In this document: piece by piece, positions 6,899-41,893 of the stretch
How positions within the stretch are numbered: position 1 is the stretch's first letter
How the letters are laid out: every line of letters starts with the position of its first letter
From: Octopus sinensis
Lineage: Eukaryota
NCBI RefSeq assembly: GCF_006345805.1
Contig: NC_043007.1
Span: 22,568,001 to 22,632,000 of the forward strand
Direction: 5' to 3'
Length of the DNA: 64,000 bases
Notes under the pieces: model-generated
What the model saw: only the letters and a program-made list of their open reading frames with translations
Databases searched by the model: none
What the model was told of the DNA's origin: nothing
Made by a program: the position numbers and the translations under genes

Positions 6899-6950
<52 letters not shown>

Positions 6951-16479: not shown

Positions 16480-16690
16480 ATATTCAAGGGGCTAAACATA
16501 GAGGGGACAAACAAGGACAGACAAAGGGATTGAGTCGATTACATCGACCCCAGTGTGTAACTGGTACTTTATTTATCGACCCCGAGAGGATGAAAGGCAA
16601 AATCGACCTCAGCGGAATTTGAACTCAGAACGTAACGACAGACGAAATATGGCTATGCATTTCGCCCGGCGCGCTAACGTTTCTGCCAGA
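16480..16690 (-). mobile_element. SINE family B monomer
   Basis: Family-B body and head. Confidence 0.8.
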
Positions 16691-16923
16691 GAGCAGAACT
16701 TATTGGCTAGGATGCTGGCTATTGAGTTGAAAGGCTGGAAGTCCATATTGTGTACAAGCTTTGTTGAATCTGTAATAAAGTTGCTTAACTCTTGACTGGC
16801 TCAGTCCACTTAACTAAAAGCATGTACCACAAGCAGACACAATCTGTACCTCTAAGCAGTAGAAACATTGTAACATTGATGTGTTATTCATTAGCTTGCA
16901 TAGTTGAATTTATATTGACAAAC

Positions 16924-17398
16924 CTGTGCCGGTGGCACGTAAAAAGCACCATCCAAACGTGACTGATCCCAGCGCCGCCTTGACCGGCTTCTGTGCCGGT
17001 GGCACGTGACCTGCTGACCTATTGAGTCAAGTACATCAACATCAAAATAAATATCAAATGGAAATTGTAGTTGTGATACCTGTATCGGTCGCACATAAAA
17101 AGCACCATCCGAACATGGCCGATGCCAGCGCCACCTTGACTGGCTTCTGTGCTGATGGCACGTAAAAAGCACCAACCGATTGTGGTCGCTGCCAGCCTCC
17201 CCTGGCACCTGTGCTGGTGGCACGTAAAAAGCACCCACTACACTCACGGAGTGGTTGGCGTTAGGAAGGGCATCCAGCTGTAGAAACACTGCCAGATCAG
17301 ACTGGAGCCTGGTGCAGCCTCCTGGTTTCCCAGACCCTGGTCAAACCGTCCAATCCGTGTTAGCACGGAAAACGGCCGTTAAACGATGATGATGATGT
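16924..17398 (+). mobile_element. RTE LINE 3' end (VNTR units, terminal domain, (GAT)n tail)
   Basis: GTGGCACGTAAAAAGCACC units, then GGTTGGCGTTAGGAAGGGCATCCAGCTGTAG...GTTAAACGATGATGATG. Same 3' end follows RTE ORF2 at 59930-60776. Confidence 0.8.
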
Positions 17399-17989
17399 GG
17401 GTCTGGAGATGTCACTCTTGTACTCTGGGTAAAAAGCTAGGAACACTCCTGGACATACTTTTGGACTAGAGTTTCTCATCATTTTGTCCTGGCTTGCAAC
17501 AAGGCTTGGATCTAGGTTTTCTGGTTTTGATTATAAGCTGTGGATCTTGGCTGATGTTTAACATTTCATTCCACATTAAATTCAACATGGACATCCTCGA
17601 TATCCATGTTAGATGTATGTTCTCCTTGGCCACAACTGATCGGCTACCGTAATATGCATGCGTTTATGATGGATTGTCATTTAACCTGTGGTCAGCCCTG
17701 ACTGGACAAGCATAAGGTAGAAGGCATTCCATCTATGACCATTCCATCTGTGACCATTTCAGACATTACTTGAGAAAAGCATATCTGGAATTGCATTATT
17801 CAATGTGTCTCTCACTTTTCAAGCTGGTAGGGTGATTTAGTTACTGTTTCTAGCAGATCAGGAAAGCTTCCTTGTTGGTATGTTGTAACTTGTAAGGGTG
17901 GATATATTTATGTTTTGGTTCAAATCCTGCCCAGTGTAGAGTTTGTTTTTCATCCTTTTGAGATTGATAAAATAACTATCAGTGAATTC

Positions 17990-18135
17990 ATCATCATCAT
18001 CATCATTTAACGTCCGCTTTCCATGCTAGCATGGGTTGGACGATTTTGACTGAGGGCTGGTGAACCGGATGGCTGCACCAGGCTCCAATCTTGATCTGGC
18101 AGAGTTTCTACAGCTGGATGCCCTTCCTAACGCCA
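17990..18135 (-). mobile_element. RTE 3' terminal fragment
   Basis: (CAT)n then TTTAACGTCCGCTTTCCATGCTAGC...GGATGCCCTTCCTAACGCC. Confidence 0.8.
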
Positions 18136-18251
18136 CACACCTTGCATGGCAGTGACACAACTATGACGTGAAGTCAAGCCAAAGAGACAGTAACACACAT
18201 ACAATACAAATACACACACACACACACACGTGATTGGGAAGCAAGCATCTT

Positions 18252-18653
18252 GTTTCTTTATTGCCCACAAGGGGCTAAACATAGAGGGGACAAACAAGGA
18301 CAGACAAAGGGATTATGTCAATTACATCGACCCAGTGTGTAACTGGTACTTAATTTATTGACCCCGAAAGGATGAAAGGCAAAGTCGACCTCGGCGGAAT
18401 TTGAACTCAGAACGTAACGGCAAACGAAATACCTATTTCTTTACTACCCACAAAGGGCTAAGCATAGAGGGGACAAACAAGGACAGACAAAGGGATTAAG
18501 TCAATTACATCGACCCCAGTGTGTAACTGGTACTTAATTTATTGACCCTGAAAGGATGAAAGGCAAAGTCGACCTCGGCGGAATTTGAACTCAGAACGTA
18601 ACGGCAGACAAAATACAGCTACGCATTTCGCCCGGCGTGCTAACGTTTCTGCC
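18252..18653 (-). mobile_element. SINE family B tandem dimer inserted in a SINE D head
   Basis: Junction GAAATACCTATTTC at 18426-18439. AGCATCTT is repeated on both flanks. Confidence 0.85.
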
Positions 18654-18819
18654 AGCATCTTCCCACACAGCACCACCTATGCCTATGTTCTCCCTATATT
18701 CTCACTTTATTTTTTTATGCTTATTTTTGTTTTCATTTATTTGTAGCTGTTGAAAATGTCTGCATAATTTAGACGTAATGCAGAGCAGATAAATGCATGG
18801 AAAATATGGAAAAATGTAT

Positions 18820-19201
18820 GCTGGTGGCACGTAAAAAGCACCATCCGTATGTGGTCGATGCCAGTACCTCCTCGACTGGCTTCTGTGCCGGTGGCACGTA
18901 AAAAGCACCATCCATACGTGGTCGATACCAGTGCCACCTTGACTAGCTTCCATGCCGGTGGCATGTAAAAAGTACCAACCGATCATGGCCATTGCCAGCC
19001 TTCCCTGGCACCTGTGCCAGTGGCACGTAAAAAGCACCCACTACACTCTCAGAGTGGTTGGTGTTAGGAAGGGCATTCAGCAGTAGAAACTCTACCAGAT
19101 CAGACCGGAGCCTGGTGCAGCCATCTGGTTTGCTAGTCCTCAGTCAAATCGTCCAACCCATGCTAGCATGGAAAACGGACATTAAACGATGATGATGATG
19201 A
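18820..19201 (+). mobile_element. RTE 3' end with ~3 VNTR units
   Basis: As 16924-17398. Confidence 0.8.
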
Positions 19202-19593
19202 TTTTATGAACTGCTTAGTTCTGCTATTATATGACCTCCTAGGATCAGAGTTGGTCATGTGTCTATAGCTGTATTTGCAAGCTGGGCAAAGATTTTTGTG
19301 TAGGATTGACAATTGTCTCTATGCATGACTTCCCTCTTTGGATTACTGATGTTACCTGAAGGGGAGACTGCTCCCTTATCCCTCTGCTATTCAAATTACT
19401 GTCAAATGTAATGTTTATCTATTCATGTTATTTTGAATTAATCAGGGATTATCTCATAGCTTTGGGATTTCAATGCTGTGACTTTACTTTTAGTATGACT
19501 TTGTAGGGTTGGTGTGAGAGGCTGGATCTGGCCAATTTGGACATAAAACAGGCAGAATATTTGGGCCAGATATGGTCAGTTTAAATACTAAAG

Positions 19594-19758
19594 TAGGGGT
19601 TCCTAACCTTTTCACTACCAAGGACCCCATTTATTTAAATGAGTTTTCCCAAGGACCCCAGGATATTGAAAGGTCAGTCAGTTTAACATGTTCGCGGACC
19701 CCTAGTACTATGTTTGTGGAACATCAAGAGTGCGTGGACCACAGGTTGGGAACCACTG
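19594..19758. mobile_element. hAT MITE (second family)
   Basis: TIRs TAGGGGTTCCTAACCT / AGGTTGGGAACCACTG and perfect 8-bp TSD TACTAAAG. Confidence 0.8.
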
Positions 19759-19896
19759 TACTAAAGGGTTGGGGCTGATAGTTTTAGCTCCACTGTCCAT
19801 TGCAAGCATTGCTGTCAGAATGCAAAAAAAAAAAAATGGCACCTGGCCATACTCAAGACCCATACTCCACAGTAGAAGTGATCCTTCGGGTTGTGC

Positions 19897-20480
19897 AAAG
19901 TGGTGTCGCATAAAAGTACCCATGTGGTGCCACGTAAAAGTGCCCATTCAGCAACATGTAAGCGCACCATGTGGTATCATATAAAAGCACCCATGTGGTG
20001 CCACATAAAAGTACCATTGTAGCGCCACATAAAAGCAACCATGTGGTACCACATAAAAGCACCATTGTAATGCCACATAAAAGCACCCATGTGGTGCCAC
20101 ATAAAAGCACCCATGTGGTACCACATAAATGCACCCATGCAGTGCCATGTAAAAGCACCAATGTAGTGCCACATAAAAGCACCCATGTGGTTCCACATTA
20201 AAATGCCCATGTGGTGCCACATAAAAGCACCCATGTGGTGCCACATAAAATGTCCATGTGGTGTCATGTAAAAGTGCCCGTGCAGTGTCACATGTAAGCG
20301 CCTGTGTAGTGTCACGTAAAAGCACCCAGCACACTCTGTAAAGTGGTTGGTGTTCGGAAGGGCATCCAGCTGTAGAAATCATGCCAAATCCCCCCCCCCA
20401 AGCTTGCCAGCTCTGGTCACACCATCCAACCCATGCCAGCATGGACAACGGATGTTAAATGATGATTATGATGATGATGA
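19897..20480 (+). mobile_element. RTE 3' end carrying a 24-bp minisatellite (~18 units, 19897-20327)
   Basis: Unit CATGTGGTGCCACATAAAAGCACC, followed by the RTE terminal domain and a (GAT)n tail. Confidence 0.8.
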
Positions 20481-20959
20481 AAGACAACCTGTTTGATGTT
20501 ACTGTCATCATCATCATCTTCATTTTAATGCACTCACAAGGGTTTAATAAGATTAGGACTATAGTAGAAGACATTTGCCCAGTAATAGACTTGCAAAGAA
20601 CAAGTCCATGGTCGATTTCTTTGACTACTGTTGGCGCTCCAGCATGGCCGCAGTCAAATGATTGAAACAAGTAAAAAGAAAAAAAGACTACATTGTCCAC
20701 TGTGTGCTCCCTTTTTAAAGATAGTTGAATGTGATTTGGAGGAAAATTTAGGTGCTATTTCTTATAGATTTAGCAAGCATATAGGGCTCCCTCATAGTTT
20801 TGGACTGCAGTATGTTTTGTGTTACAGTAACCCACTTATTGTCATAATATCCATTGAATGTATACATTAATATATGTTAAAAAGTAACCAAATATGTAAT
20901 ATAGGGATATTATCAAAGTTCTGAAGGGCCCATGGTGGTTAATGATTTGCCTTGTTTTA

Positions 20960-21757
20960 ATCAGAAGTGAGATCGCAGCCATGCATGTCCAGCCCAGCTA
21001 AGAGTACCCCTGATGCATTGTGCGATATGATATGCTTTAGAAGACCTGTTGAGTCAAGTAAAACCAAAATCGTAACTGTGACCAGTGCCCCCTGACTGGC
21101 TCCTGTAAAGGGGCATATAAAAAGCACCATCCGAATGTGGTTGATGCCAGGCCCGCCTGACTGGCTCCTGTGCTGGTGACACGTAAAAAGCACCATCCGA
21201 ATGTGGTTGATGCCAGGCCCGCCTGACTGGCTCCTGTGCTGGTGACACGTAAAAAGCACCATCCGAATGTGGTTGATGCCAGGCCCGAGTGACTGGCTCC
21301 TGTGCCAGTGGCATATAAAAAGCACCATCCGAATGTGGTTGATGCCAGGCCCGCCTGACTGGCTCCTGTGCTGGTGGCACATAAAAAGCACCATCCGAAT
21401 GTGGTTGATGCCAGGCCCACCTGACTGGCTCCTGTGCTGGTGGAACATAAAAAGCACCATCCGAATGTGGTTGATGCCAGGCCCACCTGACTGGCTCCTG
21501 TGCTGGTGGAACATAAAAAGCACCATCCGAATGTGGTTGATGCCAGGCCCAACTGACTGGCTCCTGTGCTGGTGGAACATAAAAAGCACTCACTACACTC
21601 TTGGAGTGGGTGGCATTAGGAAGGGCATCCAGCTGTAGGAACCTTGCCAGATGAGACTGGAGCTTGGTGCGACCTCCTGTCTTGCCAGTCCCCAGTCAAA
21701 CTGTCCAACCCATGCCAGCATGGAAAACAGACGTCAAATGACGACGACGATGATGAT
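20960..21757 (+). mobile_element. RTE 3' end carrying seven near-perfect 66-bp VNTR units (21119-21580)
   Basis: AAAAAGCAC recurs at 21119, 21185, 21251, 21317, 21383, 21449, 21515 and 21581. Terminal domain and tail follow. Confidence 0.9.
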
Positions 21758-22293
21758 GGATGAATTGAGGTCTCTCAACCCATTTCAAACCCAGAAGGTT
21801 TGAAAAAGTGGTTTGAGAATATTAGGTAGAAGCCAAGAGATTTTGTATACATGCATCCACCCACACATCCTCCCTTACTGTTCACTCACCTTGCATCCTC
21901 ACTCTCTTTTCTAAAATGTAAGTAGTCTTCTACCTTCTATACAGCTAAAAACCTGTTCTACTTTGGCCCCTTTTTCTTATACCTAAACCCTTTGTCTTCA
22001 CAATCATGCAAGGTGTACAGCATCCTCACTAGTGCTGGTGGTACATAAAAAGCAGTCAGGACATACTGTAAAGTGGTTGGCATTAGGAATGGTATCCAGC
22101 CATAGTAATGAAGCCAAGGCAGACATTGGAGTATGATGCAGTCCTTGGACCCAGTGGATCTTGAACCATGCAGTCCTGTCAGCATGGGACATGGATGTTG
22201 AATGATGATGATGAGGGTTTTGTGAACCGGGGGACTGGGCCACTGGAAACATGTAACTGGCAACAGTATTATTTAAAAAAGAATATGATATAA

Positions 22294-22673
22294 AACAAGA
22301 GCTCTTAGAGGGCACAAGCTTCCACCAAGGCCACATCAACGTCCTCTCAACGATTAGCCAGAGATGATTTTTAAAATGAGAATATCTGAAATAAACTCAA
22401 CTGCTCTCACAAACGAGAATACTAAAAATGAATCTGACTGCTTCCAAAAATTAAGTAAAAAACAAGAAAAATAATTCAGAATCTTTGTCCGGTACTGGAT
22501 CGATCCCAAAATCTAATCAGTTCATGCCTGCCACGAGGCCAAACATCCCTGAAAGTTTTATCTGAATCCATCCAGCGGTTCTTGAGATATATTGTCCACA
22601 GACAAACAAACAAACATACAAACAAATGTGACTGAAAACAATACCTCTGCCGCTGCTAAAGTAGAGGTAATAA
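22294..22673 (+). mobile_element. Putative Helentron-associated (HINE/DINE-1-like) element
   Basis: Starts AACAAGAG, has an (ACAA)n tract at ~22600-22625 and a 3' hairpin TACCTCTGC...GTAGAGGTA (22642-22669). Architecture recalled, not database-checked. Confidence 0.5.
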
Positions 22674-22739
22674 CATATAATAATTCCACATTACCATCTT
22701 AATAGGAGACATTGATTAATGTAATCCCAGATACACAAT

Positions 22740-22940
22740 GCTAAACACAGAGGGGACAAACAAGGACAAACAAACGGATTAAGTCGATTATATCGACCCC
22801 AGTGTGTAACTGGTACTTATTTAATCGACCCCAAAAGGATGAAAGGCAAAGTCAACCTTGGCGGAATTTGAACTCACAACGTAACGGCAGACGAAATACC
22901 GCTAAGCATTTTCGCCTGGCAAGCTAATGATTCTACCAGC
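22740..22940 (-). mobile_element. SINE family B monomer
   Basis: Family-B body with head AAGGCGGCAAGCTGGTAGAA on -. Confidence 0.85.
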
Positions 22941-23354
22941 TTGCCGCCTTGATGGAAACTTCTTGCCATACAGCCACACCTGCACTCATGATAATCATCA
23001 TGGGTTGGAAGGTTTGATGGGAACTGGCAAGGCCAGGGGCTACACCAGGCTCTATTCTCTGTTTTGGCTTGGTTTCCACAACTCTATGTCCTTCTTAACA
23101 CCGTCCACTTCACAGAGTACACTGGGTGCTTTTTATGTTCTTTCTGCTTTAGGCACAAAGGCTGAAATTTTGGGGGAAGAGACAAATCATTTACATTGAC
23201 CCTGGTCCTCAACTGGTCCTTATTTTATCAATCCTGAAAGGATGAAAGGTAAAGTTGACCATGGCGGAATTTGAACTCAGAACGTGAAGATGGATGAAAT
23301 ACTGCTAAGCATGTTGTCTGGTGAGGTAACAATTCTGCCAGCTCACCACATTAA

Positions 23355-23743
23355 CCCTTTCATTACCAACCCAGCTGAAACTGGCTCTGGCTCTGCAGTA
23401 CAAATGTTTTGTTTCCATAAGTTTTGAATCAAAATCTTCCACCAAACCTTAGTCACAATTTATGTTCCTAACACTAGCTGAATGATAACTAAGTTATTTT
23501 ACTAAATTCTTTGTTATATTTAAAATAATTCAAAGAAACACAGAGCATCTCAAATGGCTGAAATTGGCTCTGACTTTGTAGTACAAATGTTTTGTTTTCA
23601 TAAGTTTTGAATTAAGATCTTCCACTAAATCTTAGTCACAATTTATCTAATGGTAACTAAGTTATTTTACTAAATTCTTTGTTATATTTAAAGTAATTAA
23701 AAGAAACACAAAGCATCTCAGCAAAAATACAGTAACGAAAGGG
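23355..23743. mobile_element. piggyBac-like MITE with internal tandem duplication
   Basis: TTAA|CCCTTTCATTAC ... GTAACGAAAGGG|TTAA. The body consists of two diverged ~170-190-bp copies. Confidence 0.8.
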
Positions 23744-23767
23744 TTAAAAATTAAAATAATAATTATG

Positions 23768-23799
<32 letters not shown>

Positions 23800-24131
23800 T
23801 ATGATAATAATAATACTAATAATAACAACAACGATATGCATAGGCACAGGTATGGTAGTGTGGTAAGCAGCTTGCTTCTAAACCACATGGTTCCAGGTTC
23901 AGTCAAAATATTACAAGACAGAACAAAATCCGACTTGGCATTTTCTTTGATTTTCTTACAATTCCACCAGTCTTCAATTTAGATAAGCTATGTGTTTGTA
24001 TAGCAAATGTTTTCCTTTTTTTATTTATCCTAATCTATTATTTTCTTCTTCTTTTCAGAAACCCATCTGTTGTGACAAACAAAGTTGTTTGTCAGCAGAC
24101 CGGAAAGGATAACTTCATAATCAGTGACCGT

Positions 24132-24179
24132 ATGGGGAAAAAACCCCGCAAAAATCTCATGAACATGAGTAATTCAGTG
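24132..24179 (+). CDS. Candidate small upstream coding segment of the zinc-finger gene (exon 24059-24179): MGKKPRKNLMNMSNSV
   Basis: Strong acceptor TTTTCTTCTTCTTTTCAG at 24058, open frame, ATG at 24132, and a phase-0 GTATTT donor at 24180 that matches the phase-0 acceptor at 24414. Confidence 0.55.
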
Positions 24180-24414
24180 GTATTTACAGATTCTTCTGAA
24201 TGTCTGCTGGAATATTTAACCATTTCTTTTTCATTTAAAATCCTATAGCTTACATTGTTGGTAATCTAGCAGTCATTTTGCAGTGTATAGAATTTTGTTT
24301 TGATATTTGTCACAATGTCCTTATAAGGTAGATTCCTATAGTTTTTATACTTTTTTTTTTTGCCATGTACATAAAGAAACTAGATATCTACATGATTTAG
24401 ACATTTTTTGACAG

Positions 24415-27400
24415 GACAAATTCAAAATGTCAGCTGTTAATAGGGAGAAGGGCAGAGAGAATTCTTTGAGGGTGAAGGTGAAACGATTCAAGTGCAATTT
24501 CTGTGACAAGGCTTTCTCGACTGCTAGCAACATGCGTGAACATCAGAGGACTCACACAGGGGAAAGGCCTTACAAATGTGAGTTTTGTGGAAAAACATTC
24601 GCACAATCAAGCACACACTCCAAACATGTCCAGATCCACAGAAAAAAGGCATTAATGAAAAAATCAAAGAGTCCATCGCAGCTCGACACGGATCTATCGG
24701 CTGATGAGTTGCAACTGAGTAGAATTTCAATTCCTTCCACATCATTTGACACAGCGGCTCGTTTACCTGCTGATGAAAATTCTCCAGACCAGTACGCAAC
24801 TGTGATTGGGGATGTAGATTCTGATGTTGATGTAATCCATGACCATAGAGCGAATCCTGTCTGTGATAGTGTTGAGAGTGCTGCTATTGTACCTAATGTT
24901 GTTAACAATGACCAAATTAGACCATTTCTGTCCTATTCCCAATTACCAGAGGTATCGGATAAAGATTATGTAAAACCAGTTATTACAGGAATTTTTAAAA
25001 ATTTAGCTTGTGAAGTGATGCCTAAGACTCCACCTCTCATTGAATCCAACATGTGGAATGCAAATGAGCAGATTAAGAACGGAGACATAATCTACAGCAA
25101 TTCTGACATGAGTATATATCCACAGGGTTCGGAAACCAAATTGAAGTCATTTGGCAAATTTCCTGAGGGAAACTTGCCAAATGACTTAATTCAAAATCTA
25201 GAACCTTCTAGAACATTTGAAGAGCCCCAATCAAGAGATTTTGTAACGATATCACATAACGGAAGCAATGAGGTTATCAACATTGATGATCAGGATGAAG
25301 ATGAAGATGACAGCCAGGATAGTTTACCATCGAAATCTTTTGATGTCTGGACTAACCCTACCGGCTCAGTCGCAGGTTATTCTTTGGAAAAATCCTACAA
25401 ATGTACATTTTGTAATGAAAATTTTGTTTCTGTTGAAGAAATGGAGGAACACATCCAGTGTCACTTGACAGAGAAAGTATTTAAATGCCGTATTTGTCAT
25501 CGTGAATTCAACAAGTCTTTCTCACTTTTACAACACATACAAAGCCATAACACAGAAGAAAAGCTAAGTTCTGTGAGGCCAAGCAAATTGATGTTAAGTC
25601 CATCTGGTCAATACGAAGTGATTGACATTCAGGAGGGAAGCTGTCAGAAGATTTTGGAATCAGATAGTCCGTATGGTGCCTCTGCAAAAAGGACAGTGAA
25701 GTCTCTTAATGCCAGAATGCAGTACCTTGAAAGAGACTACAGGTCAAACAATCAGCAAAGTAATTTAAATGATCCTGGTTCCAGCAGCAGTCTAGACAAT
25801 TCCAACAGTTCATCATTTGTGGCCCTTACATTTGGGGACGCCGAGCATTCTTCGCATATTGATCTTACTCAAAATAGCGATGAGCCTGTTGGACAGTCGA
25901 AAGACGCTTACGACAGTGATAACGATGACACTAATGAAGATGTCATTCTGATAGAGCCTGATTTTCCAAAGAAAGAGACAAAGATGCAGGACGAATCGTC
26001 GGACAGTTCTTCTGAGAAACTGAATTATTTTGATAGTTACTTTGCTATGGGAGTGCAAGAACCGGGAGGTAGCAGCAATAAATCCTTGAAAGTGGAAGAA
26101 AGTGGTGGCCCCGATTACTTGCATTCACCGTTTCCTGACCAGTTGATCAAGAATTATAGTGGTTGCTCAAGAGGAGGGATTGTGACAAGTCAACGGAAGC
26201 ATAGGGAGCAGTTTGCCAGTAGGAGAAACCCGTTAAAAGTTGCATGCATGTTGTGTCCACGGAGGTTTTCGACTGCTAGTAACATGCGTGAACATATGAG
26301 GACACATACGGGGGAAAGACCGTTTGTCTGTAAAATCTGCCACAAAAGTTTCGCTCAGTCCAGCACACATTCTAAACACGTTCTCACTCATACAAAGAGT
26401 AAGATGTTCAGCTGTAATCTATGTGATAAAACCTTCACAAGAGCTAATAACTACAAGAAGCATTTACAGAAACATAGTGCCAAAGAGATTGCTGAACAGC
26501 TAGAGTCTAGCCCTGTGGTTTCCTCTAGTGATGGAACATCTAAAGGGATAGGTATTTGCTCTGAGTTTCTAAGAAATCTGCTAAAGAAGAAGAATGAAAT
26601 TGATCAAAGTAGCACTTCGCCCTTGTCTAATTCTAGTGACTTGTCCCATATTGCAGCAAACAGTTTGGAGAAGGAAGCCAAAGTTCGGTTGAATAAGAAG
26701 GATTTGCGACCGAGATTTTCAACTGGAGGGGAAAACCAAATGTACCAAAGTTACTCTTTCTCGAATAAAGGAGGGAGAAAAACCATCTTTAACAAATATT
26801 GTAAGCGTAAACTATCACCAGGGGTCAATCATTCGGCAACTGTGCAAGACCGGCAGCAGGAACTGATTGTAGGGGAGAACTTAACTGATGTTGTTGATCC
26901 CAGCATTCATGAAAGTAGGTTGACATCGATGAAAAGCAGAGTTGAAGAACTGCTGAAGACCAACCGTAATAGGTCGAGAGAGACTCAAGTGCTGTTGCCA
27001 TCTAACACGAGTAAAAGATATTCACAACGTAAAAGAGTTTCAAAATACATTCAGAAACTAAAGAACTACCGCCCCCATCGCTGTCTCTACTGTCCTCGAA
27101 CATTCTCCACTTCTGGTAATATGAAGGAGCACATGCGTACGCATACGGGCGAGAAACCTTACGAGTGTGAAATCTGCCACCGAAAATTTGCTCAGTCAAG
27201 CACTCATTCTAAACATGTCCTAACTCACTCTCACAAAGAACAGCTTACCTGTACATTTTGTTCAAAATCTTTCACCCACCCTGGACCTCTAAAATACCAC
27301 ATGTTTCAATGTTACAAAATAAATTATATGAAGAAAACGAAAAACAAACGTATATCTTCGTTAATACGGGGATCATCATCTTCTGAGAACCAGTCAGCAG

Positions 27401-28233
27401 ATAAGGAAACCAACTCTGTAGTTGCATCAAATTCAAGTTCTTCGGATGATAACAGCACTGAGCAATTACTGCCAAGAAATGCCGAAAAGGATCCTGGCAC
27501 TCCCTCTGCAACTTTTGTGGACAGTGAAAATATTTCTAAAATATCTAAGAGTATAGATTTACAAACATCAAATGTTTCAAAGGATCTTATTAAAAAACTC
27601 CCAGAAACATTTAGATTGTTAACTAAGCAATGCAATGATTTTTGGAGTGGTTCAGAAAGAAGTTCTCTTGCTGATCAAGATGAGAATTATTCCAAGAAAG
27701 ACCTGTGCATCTCAGACGTAAAATCTGTAATTCAAACCTCTTCAGATAAAGCAGAAGAGTTGTCCAATTCTTCGGAATTGGTTTCTATTTTGAACAACAA
27801 CTTGCTTGATAAAGTTATGAATGCTGATCTTGACAAAGAAGATTCTTCAGTGAAACAACAGGATTCAACAAGTTCTGCTGACAGCAAAATAACTTTTACC
27901 AGTCAAGAATCCCTTACATCATGGGCAGAAAATGAAGCCAGTCCGTTCTCTGGAATGAGTGAAAAATTAAATTATCTAAATTCTTCCAAAGAGAATCAAA
28001 TAGAATTAAACAAATCTGGTTTATTAGTTGACAGTGTTGTAGATTCAAGCAAAAGCTTGCAGCCGGTTTCTGTTGTGGATCTAAATTCACAGGAAAATTT
28101 ACCAATCAGCATTGAGAATATAAAGAAAGAAATTTGCGAAGACGATAATAGCGTCGATGCATTGTGTAATGATAAAAGAACACACACAACAACAAGAGCA
28201 AACAGGGCAATTGTGCAGTATGAGGATGATGAA

Positions 28234-28265
<32 letters not shown>

Positions 28266-31200
28266 CGATGATGATAATATGAAGCATATGTATCAAGTGA
28301 AAGTTGAAATTCCTTTCGAATCAAGTAGTTTCCAGCTGTCCATGACATCTTCTGAGAACCTTTCGACAGCCGGTGACCAGAATTGTGAAGCTGTAGATGA
28401 CATAATGGCCCTTAACAGAAACAATCAATTGATTAGTTACAAGACTGCTCCCTTTAGCTGCTCGTCTAAGAAAACAACCAAGAAGAACTTGCCTAACATA
28501 GATAAACAAGTCCGGGGTCTTAAAAGCAGTTTCCACCCTTTCAAGTGTGACTACTGCCCGCGCACATTTTCCACCAGCAGCAACATGAAAGAACACACCA
28601 GAATTCATACAGGTGAGAAGCCGTTCAAGTGCGAGTATTGTTATCGTACCTTTGCCCAGTCCAGTACACGGGCGAAACACTTATATACACACATCCGGGA
28701 TCAGAAATTTGTCTGCACCTATTGTTGTAAAACATTCTCTGATGCTGCTGACCTAAAGGTTCACGTAATGACTCACAGCAACGTCGATGATTCTACGGGA
28801 CTTCTCTCTACCAATTTTTCGGTCAAGACTCCAAGCAGCATGTCTAAAGACGAGGCGGATTGTCTTTCGGCTGATCGTTCATTACAAGATACATCAGACA
28901 CGGACATCCAGAATGATGATAGTTACAAAGAAGCAGAGTATAATAAAGATCTTGAAATCTCAGATGTTGATGATGATACTGAAACAGAGCCTGGTCGCGT
29001 CGATTGGTACCGTAAGAGTCTGGAGATTAAAGATTTAGATGATTTGAGCAAACTTCAATCAAAGAAAAATTTGGATAGCTTTCCCATTGAACTTTGCACT
29101 AAAATCAAATTAGAAAATGTTGGAGAAGATGAACCTGTCGAGGACCAAATGCAAGAAGAGGAAGCCTCAGTTGGTATTGATTCTGAGGTAAATTTGACCT
29201 TTGAATCCAATAAGGACTTGCTTAAAGTTTCTGCCAAATCACTGAAGAGTTTTGGAAATTCAAAAAGTGGCAATGATAAAAGATACTCTTCTCGTTTTAA
29301 AAAGTCAGGACTATCATCTGAATTCCCAGTCAATGTAGAATCAGGGTCTCATTCAAAATTAAACCAAAATGTAGAAAATTTGCCAAAAGTTAACAGCTAC
29401 GAGGGCTTTAGGTGTGTCTTCTGTAGTCGGACATTTTCATCGGCAAGTAATATGAGGGAACATGTCCGTACTCACACAGGCGAGAAACCATTTGAGTGTA
29501 AATTTTGTCATCGCAGATTTGCACAGTCCAGCACCCACTCAAGACACTTAAGAACCCATCTTCATATGAAAAAACACCAATGCTCTGAGTGTGGAAAATA
29601 TTTTCTACAATTACATAACCTCAAAAAACACATTCAAGTTCACCATAAAAAGAGTTCAACAGCTTTTAATGCCATGCTTCCGATATTATCCAATAGACTG
29701 GTAAGCAACACAGTAGACAAGACTATACAGTGTCAGGAGGGTTTTAATTCAACAGACAAGGATCTGAAAGTCACCACTGAAATTTTGTTGCCTTCTTGTG
29801 ATTTGACATCTGACTTTAGTAGCATCGACCATCAGGCAGAACAGGGCTCTGTTGTATTGAATACTACTATTGAAACCCCTAATGGCTCCACTAAACCATT
29901 TAAGTGTACTTTCTGTTATGAAACTTTTTCAAATGCTGTTGATTTTAACGAGCACACATACCTGCATACGACCGACGCTTCTTTTCAGGACTCTTTGCAT
30001 TCTCAACAAATATTTCAATGTTCAGAATGTGACAGAACTTTCCATAATAGCAAAGAACTTGAAAACCATTCTAAACGGCACACTTCCTTTTCTTCATCCA
30101 TTTTAATATGCAATTCTTGCAATCAGGAATTTCCAAACTCTCTTCTATTTCAACAGCATAAAATTCTTTGTTTGGCTCAGTCTGCTACTCTGAAAATGCT
30201 TCAGTTTAGTCCGCAGAAATCTGAAGATCCTTCGATGGATGAGTCTCCCACCTTCAGCCCATATTCTAATCAGCAAATTGAGGAAAGGTCTTCATTGAAT
30301 ACATATCTGAACTATGCGTTGTCACACAAAACAGTTAATACAAACCCTGAGACTGATGACTCAGCAGAATTTTTCTCACTACTAAAAGAGGCTGAGTCAA
30401 ATAAGGCAAGGGAAGATGTAGAAATCATATCAATAGCCAATCCCAGTTCACGTTTCAGTATACAAAAGCTAAAATTCACCAAAGACAATTCTTATTTGGA
30501 ATCATCAACTACTGACATGGCGTATCTGAAAAAACCATCCATTCCTGATCACCTGAAACTTTATCAGCAGCCAGTACAGTCGAATGACATGTTCAATAAA
30601 GGGACTGGATTGTCAGATAAAAATCGGTTAAAGACCCCCAGAAGTAAATATACCCATAAATGTCAGTTTTGTGCCAAACTCTTCAGCACAGCAAACAATC
30701 TTCGGGAACACGTGCGAACCCACACAGGTGAGAGACCGTTCAGTTGTCGAATTTGTCATCAAAGGTTTGCTCAGTCCAGCACACGTTCAAAGCATGAAAA
30801 AAGTGCTCATCGTGAAACCAAATTGTCGAAATTTCATCCAAACAGGTCTGTAATCAACTCAGGTAACTCTGTAGCCCACCTGTCGAGAAGCTTGCAACTT
30901 AATGATCGCCTGAGACTGCGACGAAATTGCCACAAATGTGACTTTTGTTTCAAAGAATTTTCATCTTACAAGTCTTTGTGTTTCCACAAACAAATTCATG
31001 TGAAGAAATTTGCAGTGAGACGAACAACTGTGGATTTTAAAGACAAATTAAATGTTTTTAAGACTGCCATTGTTGATACAGATTTGAACCAGAAACCCAT
31101 AATGCCAAAGATAAATGACCCAAACATTCTTGAAAGGAAACGTTCCTGTGCCAAATTACCAAATGAAATTCCACAAGTAGAAGAGTGTTTAGATAAAATA

Positions 31201-34200
31201 CGTGATAAGAATCAGAAGCTATATTCACCAGGAAACACAATTTCTGAAAACCAAGAAACAGGGTTGCCCTCTTCAATTGTTAATTTACTGAAATCCAAAG
31301 AAAGTTCTTCAGGAAACAACTATAACGATGTTAGTAACCTTAAAATATCTGATATAAAGTCTAAAAGGAATCTGTATTTGAAAACTCGAAGACTGCATCC
31401 ACGTACTCACAAGTGTAACTACTGTAACAAACTGTTTAGCACTCGAAACAACTTGCAAGAGCACGTGCGTACACACACAGGTGAAAGGCCTTTTAAGTGT
31501 TTGATTTGCCATCGCAGGTTTGCCCAGTCCAGTACTTGTTCCAAACACATGAAAACCACCCATCGATTTCACTCCAAACTTGCTTACGAACGGTGCAATA
31601 AAACCAGGTTATTTGAACCGCACACGGATTTCTCTGCTACCAACCAATCTGCAAAACTCCCCATGACTGCCAACGATAATAATACAAAGCCGCTGCCAAG
31701 GAAGAACCTTTACAAATGTGAATATTGTTCCAGAAATTTCTTTTCTTATCAATTTCTCTGTCTTCATAGACTGACTCACACCAAGAAACCATTCCAGAAA
31801 CAAATATTTCAAAAAATGCCACCTGATAATATTGTTTTATCATCTGAAAAATCTGATGAATTTTATGAAGAACACAATGTAAATTATAGAGGAGAACCCC
31901 CAGACAAAATAGTTGGTGATGGATTAATGTCTAGTAGTATGGATCCTTTATATCCTGACAATAATCACTTTAGTTACGGTTTGCAAAAAGGATATGATAT
32001 AATTCAAAATGAAAAAGTTGATAATCCATCAGAATTATCAGGGTATATGTCTTCTAACTCTGAATCAGATTTTAATCAAGCTCAAACCAAAGATTTAATT
32101 ATTGATTCTCATCAGAATCAATTTGAAAACAGCAGGAATAACTCTGGTGAGGAGAACTTACAGAAAATACAAGGTCTAAATTCACGCTTAAAAGAAAAGA
32201 AAGATAAAGTTTTACCGAAGATTTATTCTAAAAGGGATTCTGTAAGAAACCAGGAAATCGATAACGATGAAGGGGACGGTGATAGCATTTGTTGTGATAG
32301 TAACTTGAAGTCTGAAGAGAAATTGGATGAGGTAGAAGAATTACTGTTAAGTCGGCAACACAAAAATGGTAAGAGAGAGGAGGAAAATTTTAGCAGGAAT
32401 GCAACAAGTAGTAACTGCGCCAGTGTAACTGGTAGACAAGATTTGAAGGGGTCGAAGCAGTGTGGTTATTGTCATAAAATTTTCAAGAATGTGAGTAATT
32501 TAAAGGAGCATCACCGAATTCATACAGGGGAACGGCCCTTTCAGTGTTATTTTTGTGCCAAAGTATTCACCCATTCCAGTACGTGTTCGAGACACATGAA
32601 ACTAATGCATTTTCGAAAAAATGCATATGAGAGCTCAGTACCCAGTAGTGAAATTTCTGTTCCAATACGTAACAATAACTACGTACGAAGCAAAATGAAT
32701 CCCAGAACCAAAATTCTAAGACCAACTCATCATGGTTTAACCAAATCCTTAAATCACATGAGAGACGCTGAAAACTGTGTTTGTCCTAATTGCAACAGAG
32801 TCTATTCCGATGTAGCTTCGTTTGCTTTACACAAATTGTCGTGCAATATTACTTTCAGTGGAACAAACTTGTCCAAACCTTATTCCCAGAACTTAACTGA
32901 TTCACTCAACCAAATATACTTAGACATGGATCCATCTCGTAATCCTGGTTGCTTGCCTGAAAAGTCTTCCAGAAATGCCCATCGCTCAAGTCGTCGTGTT
33001 GTTTCTGACTCGAATAAATCTAATGGAAGGTGTGGGGGTACATTTAATGCAAACCCTGAAGATAGTGAAGGGGCAGGAGACCTATCAAGTCCAAGGGGTC
33101 ACTTTGATCATTTAGAAGAATTCTCTGACGAAATTCAGAAACGGTCATTGCAATTTGAAGCTGAGTGTATAAAAAAGGAATACGTCGAAGAATTGGTCAG
33201 TTTCCAATTGACCGAAGAAGACTGGGATCTAAGTCAGCTGGATTCGTCTTCTGCAGAAGTTATAAAGAATACGGAGAGAGTCAAAAAGGACATTTTCTCT
33301 GAGGCAAGTCATCTGAAGAAGAGGATCTCTCCAGACAATGTTGAACAACAAACACTTAGCATTATGGAGGCTGGCACCACTGATGATTGCAAAGTGAAAA
33401 CCAAAGTGGAGGCATCAGATTCAGGTCCGTATGAATATATAGATGCCAGTTCAACCTCAGTGGGCGATTCTGAAGAATGCTTGCAAGTTGAATCAAGGCA
33501 GCCGTCAGGACTTAGCTTTGATGATGTTATTGTTTTATCAGAAGATGAAAGTTCTGACAAAAGTGATGACAGGGAGGATCTGTCTTCAACTGATAACATT
33601 CTGGTGAACTCCGAAAATGCTGGTAAAGTTGTCAAAATGTCTAAGGGTCATCTAAAGAGAAATTTCATGAAGCCTGAAAGTGATGAGTATGGTTTGAACT
33701 TAGGATTAGATGCTCTGGACAGTGAATCAGTCGGATCTGATGAGGTAAGGATAATTCCTTCAAAGGAATTATTCAGTAAACGTTTGAAGTCTCGAAAACG
33801 GTTTCCTGCTTCGAACCGATCTGATGAAGCAATGAATAGAAAACCTTTAAAATCCACCAAGATTCAGGCATCTTGTGAATCTTTCAGAGTTTCTTCTTCC
33901 CTGCAATCCAAACAGCATATTTGCCCTTTCTGTCAGAAGTCTTACTCAAGTGCCAGTAACATGAAGGAACATATGAGAACTCATACAGGGGAAAGACCTT
34001 TTTCTTGCCAAATTTGTCTTAAGACATTTGCTCAGAAAAGCACTTTGTCAAAGCATATGAAAACTCACAAGGGCTTTCTTTCCACAGCTTTACAACACAA
34101 CCCTGACTATTTAGATTTCAGTTGTTCTCAGAACAAGGAATCGCTGAAAACCATTACATCCGATGAGGTTGATGGCAGTGTAGATATATCTAATGATGAA

Positions 34201-34740
34201 GAATTATCTCCAAACTCGCATTTATCCTCTAGTTTATTTACAACACCATATTTCAGAACAGTTTCTTTAGACATTAGTGATACCTCTAGTATTAAAGATA
34301 GTAACACTGTTAGGCAGTTGCAGTCCCATGGTTTAGAAAATGCATCACAATCTGTAGATCGTCTGCAGTCCAATGATGACCTAACTGTGACTGAGGGTGG
34401 TGTGGCTTCTGTAATCGCCAGCGGGAACCAACCTAGTACAATAGCGAACTCTTCTAATTTTGCACGCAACAAACATTCTCCCAGTCCCACCAAACAAACA
34501 ACACATTCATCCACCAAGAATTCGACGAAAGCCGACTGTTTTACCAAGCCATTTCAGTGTGATATCTGCTGTAAAACATTCACTACATCAGGAAATCTGA
34601 AAGAGCACAGACGAATTCATACAGGAGAAAGACCATTCGAGTGTCCATTTTGTAGCAGAACTTTTGTGCAAGCAAGCACACGATCACGACACGTTAAAAA
34701 CCATTTAAAACATTCAGACATTTCTCTGATTAATGCATGA
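24415..34740 (+). CDS. Giant single coding exon of a C2H2 zinc-finger protein (~3,440 aa; 29 C2H2 + 3 C2HC fingers; ten repeated finger pairs)
   Basis: Uninterrupted 3437-aa ORF 24427-34740 with in-frame acceptor TTTTTTGACAG at 24414. Ten HTGE[RK]P linkers. Acidic and Ser-rich spacers. Confidence 0.95.
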
Positions 34741-35039
34741 AACGTCAGCAATATATTTTCAATTGGAAGACAATTAGTTAAAAATCAAATTAAAAATATT
34801 GGTCAATTTCTACAAAGGGTCTTCTAATTAGTCTATTTTTCATCAATTTTCGTTCATTTTGTATTAAAAATATGTGGATCATAACCATTTTTTTCATGTT
34901 TGATGCACACCTGGCAGGGCAGATTCACATTGATTTAGTTGTTTATTTTGTAAACAATGAATGTATAGTATTGATGGTTTGATGACAGTGAATGCATGTT
35001 GTATACATACTGTAGTGTGAAGGGTACAGTGTTTTAAGT

Positions 35040-41810: not shown

Positions 41811-41893
41811 GATATTTCAAACCATTTCGTACTATGGTGTACAGTCAATAATGTTTACTGAGCAGAATAAAAATTTTTTTTAAAGCAAGTTAT

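What the first reader, a model, noticed from the sequence alone, without database searches (positions are those of the whole stretch)
24427..34740. Ten copies of one fixed-specificity zinc-finger pair dispersed along a 3,400-aa protein
Seen: of 32 fingers, 20 form ten modules [finger A]-HTGE[RK]P-[finger B], with linkers starting at 24553, 26305, 27142, 28606, 29473, 30721, 31474, 32521, 33982 and 34618. Finger A helices are near-invariant: TASNMRE, TASNMRE, TSGNMKE, TSSNMKE, SASNMRE, TANNLRE, TRNNLQE, NVSNLKE, SASNMKE, TSGNLKE. Finger B helices are too: QSSTHSK x3, QSSTRAK, QSSTHSR, QSSTRSK, QSSTCSK, HSSTCSR, QKSTLSK, QASTRSR. The 200-580-aa spacers are unrelated acidic/Ser-rich sequence and the 12 other fingers vary freely. 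Established: dispersed double fingers occur in Spalt and Schnurri/HIVEP, but with only a few clusters; expanded octopus and KRAB-type ZNFs are usually tandem arrays with diversifying helices. Inference: a multivalent reader holding ten hands for the same ~6-bp motif on long flexible tethers, suited to coating or bridging repetitive DNA (looping, satellite or TE clustering, condensates) rather than reading one long site.
Basis: partly seen in the sequence, partly recalled or inferred. Interest (0 to 1): 0.8.

Follow-up and report, generated by a model that had tools for sequence, protein, structure and literature searches.

The report
Ten-fold repeated zinc-finger pair protein
A real 3,437-residue octopus gene, conserved in other cephalopods, carries ten widely spaced copies of one two-zinc-finger DNA-reading unit whose base-contacting residues selection has kept fixed, so it probably grips many copies of one short DNA word at once, though that function is untested.

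Summary
Window 24427-34740 (+) is one uninterrupted coding exon of 3,437 aa. It holds 32 C2H2 fingers, and 20 of them form ten A-HTGE[RK]P-B modules at the stated coordinates.

The base-contacting helix positions are invariant or nearly so across the ten copies. Variation falls on the non-contact positions.

The copies are old. Synonymous sites between them are saturated. Each Octopus module is closest to the same-position module in Argonauta. Six modules also have positional counterparts in two more distant relatives.

Module helices evolve about 12 times slower than the spacers (dN 0.037 versus 0.43). The module occurs nowhere else in this genome, and no protein outside these relatives was found to carry it.

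A module model matches DNA-bound finger pairs. A spacer model is unfolded. The spacers carry conserved SUMO-interaction-like and SUMO-acceptor-like motifs.

By analogy with engineered fingers, the predicted site is about 5'-GTACAT-3'. No dedicated satellite with that word was found.

The same genome holds at least two other giant proteins built on the same plan, so this is an extreme member of a recurring but undescribed architecture. Multivalent DNA reading is inferred. A role on repeats is untested.

The parts
13515..13648 (+). Putative non-coding first exon and promoter-proximal block, ending in the splice donor AAAG|GTAAGT (GT at 13649-13650)
   Evidence: The stretch 13515-13851 is 74% identical to sequence 5.2 kb upstream of the Argonauta orthologue. 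It contains a run of about 130 nearly identical bases that ends exactly at a consensus donor. Its role as an exon is inferred; no transcript data were available.
13649..24414 (+). Putative intron of about 10.8 kb, ending in the acceptor ttttttgacAG (AG at 24413-24414)
   Evidence: A polypyrimidine tract plus AG lies 12 nt before the ATG. The donor was located. Inferred.
24427..34740 (+). Single coding exon: 3,437 codons plus stop; giant C2H2 zinc-finger protein
   Evidence: Full-length single-exon orthologues exist in Argonauta hians (P0002/L002, 49% identity, 100% coverage) and in an unnamed ENA assembly (P0004/L001).
24484..24645 (+). Module 1 (helices TASNMRE / QSSTHSK)
   Evidence: Best match is Argonauta module 1 at 86%.
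26236..26397 (+). Module 2 (TASNMRE / QSSTHSK); a third finger RANNYKK follows at 26413-26475
   Evidence: 98% to the same-position Argonauta module.
27073..27234 (+). Module 3 (TSGNMKE / QSSTHSK); a third, C2HC finger follows at 27250-27312
   Evidence: 80% to the same-position module of P0004. Finger B of this module is degenerate in the Argonauta protein.
28537..28698 (+). Module 4 (TSSNMKE / QSSTRAK); a third finger follows at 28714-28776
   Evidence: 88% to Argonauta. No counterpart in P0004 or P0013.
29404..29565 (+). Module 5 (SASNMRE / QSSTHSR); a third finger QLHNLKK follows at 29581-29646
   Evidence: 92% to Argonauta, 75% to P0004.
30652..30813 (+). Module 6 (TANNLRE / QSSTRSK); a distal finger SYKSLCF lies at 30937-30999
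   Evidence: A decayed relic aligns at this position in P0004 and P0013.
31405..31566 (+). Module 7 (TRNNLQE / QSSTCSK); a distal finger SYQFLCL lies at 31717-31779
   Evidence: 94% to Argonauta; 77% to module 6, so the unit of module plus distal finger was duplicated. Only finger A survives in P0004 and P0013.
32452..32613 (+). Module 8 (NVSNLKE / HSSTCSR), the most divergent copy; a distal C2HC finger lies at 32776-32844
   Evidence: 90% to Argonauta.
33913..34074 (+). Module 9 (SASNMKE / QKSTLSK)
   Evidence: The helix QKSTLSK is identical in all four orthologues.
34549..34710 (+). Module 10 (TSGNLKE / QASTRSR), at the C-terminus
   Evidence: 98% to Argonauta, 86% to P0004.
25402..25548 (+). 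Non-module finger pair 3-4 (SVEEMEE / KSFSLLQ)
   Evidence: Conserved in Argonauta.
29905..30171 (+). Non-module fingers 17-19, loosely spaced; the last is C2HC
   Evidence: Conserved in Argonauta, absent from P0004 and P0013.
25939..25962 (+). SUMO-interaction-like motif DVILIEPD inside an acidic stretch
   Evidence: The same alignment column holds DIIMIEPD in Argonauta and DDVIIIEAN in P0004. Function inferred from the motif only.
33523..33570 (+). SUMO-interaction-like motif DVIVLSEDESSDKSDD: hydrophobic core followed by acidic and Ser residues
   Evidence: Present at the same column in all four orthologues (EIIIVSDEENDDES in P0004), within a spacer that is otherwise 20% identical.
25270..25311 (+). 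Third SIM-like motif, EVINIDDQDEDEDD
   Evidence: Conserved in Argonauta, weak in P0004.
29098..29133 (+). SUMO-acceptor-like site IKLE followed by acidic residues (TKIKLENVGEDE)
   Evidence: The psi-K-x-E motif lies at the same column in all four orthologues. Three further sites are shared with Argonauta: 28114-28146 (IKKE), 28291-28320 (VKVE) and 33163-33192 (IKKE/VKQE).
34749..34840 (+). Start of the 3' UTR
   Evidence: 86% identical to the sequence directly after the Argonauta stop codon.

Best explanation
This is a genuine, selectively maintained gene that seems to be restricted to cephalopods. It encodes a nuclear DNA-binding scaffold.

Ten two-finger units, each built like a canonical DNA-reading C2H2 pair, carry the same base-contacting residues. 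Each should therefore recognise the same word of about 6 bp, roughly 5'-GTA CAT-3'. They are strung on long, acidic, Ser-rich, unfolded tethers. One molecule could then hold up to ten copies of that word at once. This would give high avidity for regions where the word is clustered, or would bridge distant sites.

Conserved SUMO-interaction-like and SUMO-acceptor-like motifs in the tethers suggest that the protein also recruits, or assembles with, SUMO-dependent chromatin factors.

Shown: the anatomy, the age of the copies, purifying selection focused on the contact residues, the fold of the module, and the absence of the module from other genes.

Inferred: DNA binding itself, the identity of the word, simultaneous engagement of several modules, and SUMO involvement.
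For:
- Contact positions -1, +2, +3 and +6 are the most conserved among the copies (majority fraction about 0.86, against 0.62 for +1, +4 and +5). That is the reverse of diversifying tandem arrays.
- All ten linkers are canonical TGE[RK]P.
- The copies are ancient and not homogenised. Synonymous difference between copies averages pS 0.90, and nucleotide identity averages 58%. Every Octopus module is closest to the same-position Argonauta module, at 81-98%. Six have positional counterparts in P0004 and P0013.
- Selection is focused on the modules. Against Argonauta, module helices are 92.9% identical with dN 0.037; other-finger helices are 79.8% with dN 0.116; spacers are 45% with dN 0.43.
- The AlphaFold model of a module has pLDDT 92.8. 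Its best PDB matches are all DNA-bound pairs: BCL11A ZF4-6, SALL4 ZFC4 (TM 0.91), ZBTB24 (TM 0.93) and Zif268.
- The spacer model has pLDDT 39.8 and pTM 0.14.
- Engineered helices give a predicted site. TSGNLTE targets CAT (PMC7317221), and module 10 has TSGNLKE. QNSTLTE targets CTA (PMC6146835). The standard recognition code gives K/R at +6 a G.
- SIM-like and psi-K-x-E motifs keep their positions within fast-evolving spacers.
Against: - There are no binding data of any kind.
- Finger B has H, R, C or L at helix position +4, where a core Leu is usual. This could weaken the fold or change docking.
- Module-specific residues at non-contact positions are themselves conserved between species, so the ten copies may not be functionally equivalent.
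- P0004 keeps only six modules and Argonauta nine, so ten is not required.
- Clusters of GTACAT are not enriched in the genome: 17,472 against 47,975 for the reversed control. The word is not enriched in the window either: 34 against 37 expected.
- The counts of SIM-like and psi-K-x-E motifs are not significantly above shuffles: 2 against 0.42, and 8 against 4.3 with p about 0.07.
- dS against Argonauta is saturated, so dN/dS ratios are approximate.
Confidence: 0.55

Rival explanations
1. It is an ordinary gene-regulatory transcription factor or co-repressor of the SALL, BCL11 or HIVEP style. Only one or a few modules engage DNA at a time. The extra copies add redundancy, search speed or avidity at homotypic motif clusters in enhancers. 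It does not organise repeats or bridge chromatin.
For: - The known multi-cluster finger proteins with repeated double fingers are gene regulators.
- The closest solved structures are BCL11A and SALL4 pairs.
- The number of modules is not fixed across lineages: 10, 9 and 6.
- No satellite carrying the predicted word was found.
- The variable third fingers next to modules 2-8 could give each site its own extended specificity.
Against: - Ten copies have been maintained with saturated synonymous divergence and a very low helix dN. That is more than simple redundancy would be expected to preserve.
- The tethers of 163-535 aa are far longer than needed to read adjacent sites.
Confidence: 0.27
2. The modules are not DNA readers. 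They bind protein, RNA or a modified partner, and the protein is a non-DNA scaffold.
For: - Pfam also reports a zf-C2H2_jaz (dsRNA-binding type) match, with one stretch at 1666-1687.
- Finger B lacks the usual Leu at +4.
- Several non-module fingers have hydrophobic helices (SYKSLCF, SYQFLCL, DVASFAL) that look unlike base readers.
Against: - All ten pairs have the canonical TGE[RK]P linker that is typical of DNA-binding arrays.
- The conserved residues are exactly the canonical base-contact positions, with N+3, Q-1 and K/R+6.
- The model superposes on DNA-bound pairs at 0.7-1.6 angstrom rmsd.
- The jaz match is a cross-match on a standard finger. The zf-C2H2 family scores far higher, E 3.8e-77.
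Confidence: 0.1
3. It is not a functional gene: a chance ORF, a decaying pseudogene or a transposon-derived ORF.
For: It is a single exon of about 10.3 kb lying in repeat-rich DNA.
Against: - An open frame of 3,442 codons in 38% G+C DNA cannot arise by chance.
- Full-length collinear orthologues exist, with dN much lower than dS.
- A splice acceptor, a conserved upstream exon-like block and a conserved 3' UTR start are present.
- The module occurs only once in the genome, in this gene.
Confidence: 0.02

Closest known systems
Spalt / SALL1-4
   Same: A long protein with several widely separated double C2H2 fingers. The helices are nearly the same from cluster to cluster, and canonical linkers sit inside each pair. 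A single pair (SALL4 ZFC4) is enough to read a short AT-rich word (PMC9672407). The SALL4 ZFC4-DNA structure superposes on the module model at TM 0.91.
   Different: SALL proteins have up to about four doubles, not ten. The N-terminal MSRRKQ motif and the 'SAL box' TKGNLK in the second finger are absent here. The helix residues differ. The whole-protein homologue search returned no SALL protein.
BCL11A/B (CTIP1/2)
   Same: It has two separated finger groups (ZF2-3 and ZF4-6), and PDB entries show both on TGNCCA-type DNA (entry titles). That is a small-scale case of the same specificity present twice in one protein. It gives the best Foldseek E-values and 49-52% identity to the module model.
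   Different: The sequence score of a single module against BCL11A (57-60 bits) is no better than against Zif268. There is no N-terminal NuRD-binding motif. BCL11A has two copies, not ten.
HIVEP / Schnurri (ZAS-domain proteins)
   Same: Giant proteins with widely separated finger pairs next to acidic and Ser/Thr-rich sequence. Both pairs read similar sites (established knowledge, recalled rather than tested here).
   Different: They have only two ZAS pairs. HIVEP3 matches are marginal: E 7e-5 to 7e-4 over 2% of the query.
ZNF236-type proteins
   Same: Long proteins in which whole finger clusters recur with the same helices. In the Diadema ZNF236-like protein P0017, three cluster types each occur twice (read directly from the sequence). 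NCBI names several molluscan and cephalopod giants 'ZNF236-like'.
   Different: They are heterotypic, with several module types of two copies each and 3-5 fingers per cluster. Identity is 22-25% over 10-31% of the query. None carries this module.
Other giant dispersed-module finger proteins of the same genome (G000 C4:75545013-75553367 and C18:25481585-25488589)
   Same: The plan is identical: one coding ORF of 2,300-2,800 aa, with one fixed finger module repeated about 10 and about 5-6 times at long intervals. In the C4 ORF the spacers are Ser-, Asn- and acid-rich.
   Different: Their modules have three fingers and different helices. With fingers masked, there is no similarity between their spacers and those of this protein. 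They are separate families.
Drosophila D1 and vertebrate HMGA1 (multi-AT-hook satellite binders), and Prod
   Different: AT-hooks bind the minor groove, not C2H2 fingers. There is no homology. No repeat target is known for the octopus protein.
KRAB-, SCAN-, BTB- or ZAD-type tandem poly-zinc-finger proteins, including the expanded octopus C2H2 clusters (PMC12513265)
   Same: The C2H2 fold and the TGEKP linkers.
   Different: No effector domain was found. The fingers are dispersed, not tandem. The contact residues are conserved, not diversified. The module is absent from the tandem clusters on C27, C28 and C30.

Membership tests
C2H2 zinc-finger proteins (Pfam PF00096 / PF13465) | C-x2-4-C-x12-H-x3-5-H spacing with a conserved Phe, and a score above the Pfam threshold | tested here: met
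   32 fingers by regex. zf-C2H2 E 3.8e-77 and zf-H2C2_2 E 4.3e-77.
C2H2 zinc-finger proteins (Pfam PF00096 / PF13465) | Beta-beta-alpha fold; tandem fingers joined by a TGEKP-type linker | tested here: met
   The AlphaFold model has pLDDT 92.8 with two beta-beta-alpha units. It superposes on DNA-bound pairs at rmsd 0.7-1.6 angstrom. The linker is TGE[RK]P in 10 of 10 modules.
C2H2 zinc-finger proteins (Pfam PF00096 / PF13465) | Sequence-specific DNA binding | not testable with these tools
   Only predicted: about GTACAT, by analogy with engineered helices.
Spalt / SALL | N-terminal 12-residue NuRD-binding motif (MSRRKQ...) and a C2HC finger at the N-terminus | tested here: not met
   The N-terminus is MSAVNREKGRENS. 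No RRKQ motif occurs anywhere.
Spalt / SALL | 'SAL box' (F-T-T-K-G-N-L-K) in the second finger of each double | tested here: not met
   No T[KR]GNLK occurs. The nearest string, FTTSGNLKEH, is in the first finger of module 10.
BCL11 / CTIP | Specific sequence relationship of the finger pairs and an N-terminal NuRD motif | tested here: not met
   A single module scores 57-60 bits against BCL11A, the same as against Zif268. No N-terminal motif is present.
HIVEP / Schnurri | Two ZAS domains, with homology beyond generic fingers | tested here: not met
   Only marginal hits were found: E 7e-5 to 7e-4 over 2% of the query.
ZNF236 | Collinear orthology: the same succession of cluster types | tested here: not met
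   22-25% identity over 10-31% of the query. No ZNF236-named protein carries more than one helix-specific match.
KRAB / SCAN / BTB / ZAD poly-ZNF | An N-terminal effector domain plus a tandem finger array | tested here: not met
   Pfam finds finger families only. The fingers are dispersed.
The cephalopod family defined here (window protein, Argonauta P0002, P0004, P0013) | Collinear series of A/B modules with N+3 and E+6 in finger A and S+2, T+3 and K/R+6 in finger B; first module at the N-terminus and last at the C-terminus; conserved SIM-like motif ahead of module 9 | tested here: met
SUMO-interacting / SUMO-modified chromatin scaffolds | Functional SIMs and SUMO-acceptor lysines | tested here: inconclusive
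   The motifs are present and keep their positions. Their counts are not significantly above shuffles, and no biochemistry was possible.

The most novel reading that the evidence does not exclude
This is one member of an undescribed class of cephalopod (and possibly wider) chromatin-architecture proteins. Each member repeats one fixed-specificity finger module about 5-12 times on long disordered, SUMO-linked tethers. Together they would act as zinc-finger counterparts of the multi-AT-hook satellite bundlers, gathering dispersed copies of one short DNA word into nuclear bodies or loops.
Probability: 0.18. Interest if true: 0.75.

Novelty: new variant of a known kind. Interest (0 to 1): 0.5.

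Why it matters
Most discussion of expanded animal zinc-finger genes, including the octopus expansions, concerns tandem arrays whose contact residues diversify. This protein does the opposite. One two-finger reader is kept unchanged in its contact residues, copied ten times, and spread over 3,400 residues. Synonymous sites between the copies, and between Octopus and Argonauta, are saturated.

If the modules bind the same word, the protein is a natural test case for homotypic multivalency in DNA recognition by fingers. It would let avidity, bridging and condensate formation be studied directly.

It also points to a set of similarly built giants in the same genome that nobody seems to have described as a class.

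It is readily testable, because each module is a 54-residue domain suited to SELEX, PBM or crystallography.

Tried and rejected
1. A profile of the ten modules was run against 1.84 billion representative proteins, and a five-module query against 5.8 billion proteins. Both lists were swamped by generic tandem poly-finger proteins. A regex for the module found it only in the orthologues.
2. The fix was a query with everything except the two helices masked as X. It returned only P0004 and P0013 as real matches. It covers proteins of 990-3,150 aa only, so shorter or unannotated relatives, for example in Nautilus or other molluscs, cannot be excluded.
3. The PDB sequence search suggested at first that BCL11A was specially close, at 88.7 bits in one stretch. 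A single-module search showed it is no closer than Zif268. I rejected this as a family assignment.
4. A genome search for clusters of the predicted word (GTACAT three times within 25-nt gaps) gave fewer hits than the reversed control, and only ACAT-type microsatellites. No satellite target emerged.
5. PxVxL (HP1), PxDLS (CtBP) and WRPW motifs were not found.
6. I tried to identify the species behind ERZ21867824, SRR29271455 and SRR7369732 through cluster look-up and the literature. Nothing came back, so the statement that P0004 and P0013 are decapodiform cephalopods is only a guess from divergence.
7. The module of P0010, an analogous 12-pair giant from an unknown organism, has no close copy in this genome.
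8. Rfam found nothing in the window.
9. A self-comparison of the spacers found no hidden repeat unit.


Full report
**What is there**

Between 24412 and 34740 on the + strand lies the only long open frame of the region: 3,442 codons from stop to stop. The first Met is at 24427, which gives a protein of 3,437 residues.

A polypyrimidine tract and AG (ttttttgacAG, AG at 24413-24414) sit 12 nt before the ATG. About 10.8 kb upstream, a block at 13515-13851 is 74% identical to sequence upstream of the Argonauta orthologue. Its best-conserved ~130 bases end exactly at a consensus donor, AAAG|GTAAGT, at 13648/13649. The first ~90 bases after the stop codon are 86% identical to Argonauta.

The likely gene structure is therefore a short non-coding exon, one intron, and a single coding exon of 10.3 kb. 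The exon 1 assignment is inferred.

The assembly has 2.72 Gb in 13,516 contigs, and the window is C11:22568001-22632000. The Argonauta orthologue is named after gene LOC115217058. I take this to be an Octopus genome, but that is inference.

**Checking the observation**

A regex scan finds 32 C2H2-type fingers. Pfam reports finger families only.

Ten pairs are joined by TGE[RK]P[FY]x. All 20 helix strings are as listed.

Mean pairwise helix identity is 0.57 among A fingers, 0.71 among B fingers and 0.13 among the other twelve. None of 50,000 random groups of ten fingers reaches 0.57.

The pattern of conservation is informative. In finger A, N at +3 and E at +6 are invariant, and -1 is T, S or N. 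In finger B, S+2, T+3 and K/R+6 are invariant, and Q-1 is 9 of 10. Variation concentrates on +1, +4 and +5, which do not normally touch bases.

With fingers masked, the spacers have no similarity to each other. They are 15% Ser and 16% Asp+Glu with net charge -82, against +85 for the finger parts.

- Inter-module distances are 163-535 aa.
- Modules 2-5 are really three-finger clusters with a variable third finger. Modules 6-8 have a third finger 42-55 aa away. Three 'other' fingers are C2HC.
- The other fingers are individually conserved between octopods.

**Relatives**

The first protein search gave a full-length orthologue in Argonauta hians (P0002, 3,300 aa, 49% identity, 100% coverage, 'uncharacterized protein'). 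It also gave two more distant collinear proteins: P0004 (3,113 aa, ENA assembly) and P0013 (a 5'-truncated Logan contig). The Argonauta and P0004 genes are also single uninterrupted ORFs.

Argonauta has nine intact modules; finger B of module 3 is degenerate. P0004 has six, corresponding to Octopus modules 1, 2, 3, 5, 9 and 10. At the positions of modules 6 and 7, P0004 and P0013 show decayed relics, or a surviving A finger only.

Every Octopus module is most similar to the module at the same position in Argonauta (81-98%), not to its neighbours in the same protein (at most 77%). The six shared modules are next closest to their P0004 or P0013 counterparts. Between the ten Octopus copies, synonymous sites are saturated (mean pS 0.90, minimum 0.69) and nucleotide identity averages 58%.

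The copies are therefore old, are not being homogenised by gene conversion, and resemble each other because the protein sequence is under selection.

**Selection**

In a codon alignment with Argonauta:

| Region | Identity | dN |
|---|---|---|
| Module helices | 92.9% | 0.037 |
| Rest of the module fingers | 84.7% | 0.081 |
| Helices of the other fingers | 79.8% | 0.116 |
| Spacers | 45% | 0.43 |

dS is 1.25-1.76, which is saturated. The ratios (about 0.02 for module helices against about 0.34 for spacers) are therefore rough, but the roughly 12-fold difference in dN is robust. Against P0004, module helices are 67% identical, other helices 26% and spacers 20%.

**Uniqueness**

A six-frame search of the whole genome with module 2 returns the query module itself plus eight of the gene's nine other modules, all above or among the best outside hits. 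The best match outside the gene is 56% identical, which is ordinary finger background.

Two broad database searches were swamped by tandem poly-finger proteins. A regex for the module found it only in the orthologues. A search in which everything but the two helices was masked returned only P0004 and P0013 as true matches among 5.8 billion proteins of 990-3,150 aa.

Within what these tools can reach, the family is confined to the window species, Argonauta and the two unnamed assemblies. I could not establish what those two organisms are.

**Structure and likely DNA word**

AlphaFold gives the module two canonical beta-beta-alpha units at pLDDT 92.8. The best PDB matches are all finger pairs bound to DNA: BCL11A ZF4-6, SALL4 ZFC4 (TM 0.91), ZBTB24 (TM 0.93, rmsd 0.7 angstrom) and Zif268. 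Sequence searches of the PDB show no specific kinship with any of them.

A 351-residue spacer, modelled with its three orthologous sequences, has pLDDT 39.8 and pTM 0.14. Only weak helices appear, around one conserved island. This is consistent with flexible tethers, with the caveat that the alignment is shallow.

For the target, finger A helices (TSGNLKE, TSGNMKE, TASNMRE and so on) match the engineered helix TSGNLTE, which is used for 5'-CAT-3' (PMC7317221). Finger B (QSSTHSK) shares Q-1, S+2 and T+3 with QNSTLTE, which is used for 5'-CTA-3' (PMC6146835). It has K/R at +6, which by the standard recognition code reads G.

Since the C-terminal finger reads the 5' triplet, the prediction is 5'-GTA CAT-3'. 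This is an inference. Finger B also has H, R, C or L at +4 instead of the usual core Leu, which could alter docking.

**Testing the repeat idea**

Three GTACAT words within 25-nt gaps occur 17,472 times in the genome, against 47,975 for the reversed control. The hits are ACAT-type microsatellites. In the window the word occurs 34 times against 37 expected. No dedicated satellite emerged, so a role on repeats remains an open proposal.

**What else the tethers carry**

Three hydrophobic-core-plus-acidic motifs resemble SUMO-interaction motifs:
- DVILIEPD (25939-25962), also present in Argonauta and P0004.
- DVIVLSEDESSDKSDD (33523-33570), present at the same column in all four proteins within a 20%-identical spacer.
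- EVINIDDQDEDEDD (25270-25311), conserved in octopods.

Four psi-K-x-E sites followed by acidic residues are shared with Argonauta, and one of them (IKLE, 29098-29133) is shared by all four.

The motif counts are not significantly above shuffles, so the argument rests on positional conservation only. HP1, CtBP and Groucho-type motifs are absent.

**Context: a recurring plan**

The same genome has other giant single-ORF finger proteins built in the same way:
- C4:75545013-75553367 (-) is a 2,785-aa frame with about ten dispersed three-finger modules (SALxI/V, QxAHLDV, QxxN+xR).
- C18:25481585-25488589 (-) is a 2,334-aa frame with 5-6 dispersed three-finger modules.

Argonauta P0015 and P0033, the Logan protein P0010 (twelve dispersed pairs, organism unknown, no close copy in this genome) and an Amphiura protein show similar plans. 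With fingers masked, none of these shares spacer similarity with the window protein. ZNF236-type proteins repeat three cluster types twice each.

The cephalopod C2H2 paper I checked does not mention dispersed or spaced architectures. The plan is therefore recurrent but, as far as I could find, not described. The window protein is its most extreme two-finger, homotypic example.

**Verdict**

The gene is real and under strong purifying selection that is focused on the presumed DNA-contact residues of ten ancient copies of one finger pair.

The best reading is a multivalent reader of one short DNA word on flexible, possibly SUMO-linked tethers (confidence 0.55). Whether it organises repeats, bridges chromatin, or simply acts as a high-avidity regulator at clustered sites cannot be decided here.

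It is not a member of the SALL, BCL11, HIVEP, ZNF236 or KRAB-type families by their defining features. I class it as a new variant of a known kind, of moderate interest.

Noticed in passing
G000 C4:75545013-75553367 (-) (loci L029+L030): A 2,785-aa open frame with 44 fingers. About ten dispersed copies of one three-finger module (helices x-S-A-L-x-I/V, Q-x-A-H-L-D-V, Q-x-x-N-+-x-R; TGE(S/T)P linkers) are separated by Ser-, Asn- and acid-rich spacers. This is the same plan as the window gene, but with an unrelated module and unrelated spacers.
   Followed up: partly
G000 C18:25481585-25488589 (-) (locus L023, 2586-9590): A 2,334-aa open frame with 33 fingers, including 5-6 dispersed copies of a three-finger module (HLT/RYH, SDLN/KRH, SNLxxH).
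   Followed up: partly
G000 C27:8050000-8058391 (+) (locus L024): More than 90 tandem, almost identical C2H2 fingers (helix QSTNLTD, 28-aa unit) in frames of 1,033 aa (open at the 5' end) and 1,762 aa, separated by a single stop. It is a coding tandem array that looks very recently amplified, or possibly an assembly collapse or expansion. Its architecture is the opposite of the window gene.
   Followed up: no
window 12951-13851: Non-coding sequence conserved with Argonauta (72-74% identity). It includes a run of about 130 nearly identical bases that ends at a splice donor at 13648/13649. It is probably the promoter and first exon of the finger gene. It contains GCGCCATCGTGAGG, which resembles a YY1-type element (a recalled resemblance, not tested).
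   Followed up: partly
window 45116-45250 and 43771-43840: Short stretches 77-89% identical to sequence 8.4-8.9 kb downstream of the Argonauta orthologue. There, a tyrosine-phosphatase-domain gene is annotated on the opposite strand. These may be conserved exons of the syntenic neighbour.
   Followed up: no
window 28222-28275: A run of 18 acidic residues (EDDED14) encoded by a GAT trinucleotide repeat inside the spacer between modules 3 and 4. The run is absent at this position in Argonauta, so it is a lineage-specific microsatellite expansion within the coding sequence.
   Followed up: partly
Argonauta P0002 residues ~878-905 (locus L002): Finger B of module 3 has lost its cysteines in the Argonauta protein (SGVSHQSLVQADTQSKHDLSH), while the reading frame stays open. 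This is either real decay of one module or a local assembly or annotation error.
   Followed up: no
window 6504-6923 (+): An ORF fragment containing FITGDETWVHHYEPESKRQSLEW, which looks like a mariner/Tc1-type transposase remnant. It is flanked by long (TA)n tracts. Recognised by eye, not tested.
   Followed up: no
window 41852-42424 (+): A 190-aa ORF fragment that looks like the C-terminal part of a non-LTR retrotransposon reverse transcriptase. Recognised by eye, not tested.
   Followed up: no
window 18253-21700 and 60329-63325: Several tandem arrays: periods of 184, 67, 24 and 66 bp upstream of the gene, and 64, 156 and 347 bp near the 3' end of the window. The latter region has a strong positive GC skew (0.27-0.33). 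The 184-bp unit recurs at 35643-36011.
   Followed up: no
protein P0010 (locus L016, Logan run SRR7369732): A 3,899-aa protein from an unidentified organism, with about twelve dispersed copies of the pair FNESSNLIKH / FTQSSNLNVH. The second finger ends in Cys (C2HC). It was seen in 26 near-identical versions from many runs. It is an independent example of the same architecture.
   Followed up: partly
window fingers B of all ten modules (e.g. 26329-26391): Helix position +4, normally the core Leu of a C2H2 finger, is H (4 modules), R (3), C (2) or L (1). The residue is module-specific and conserved in Argonauta. Its meaning is unexplained.
   Followed up: partly
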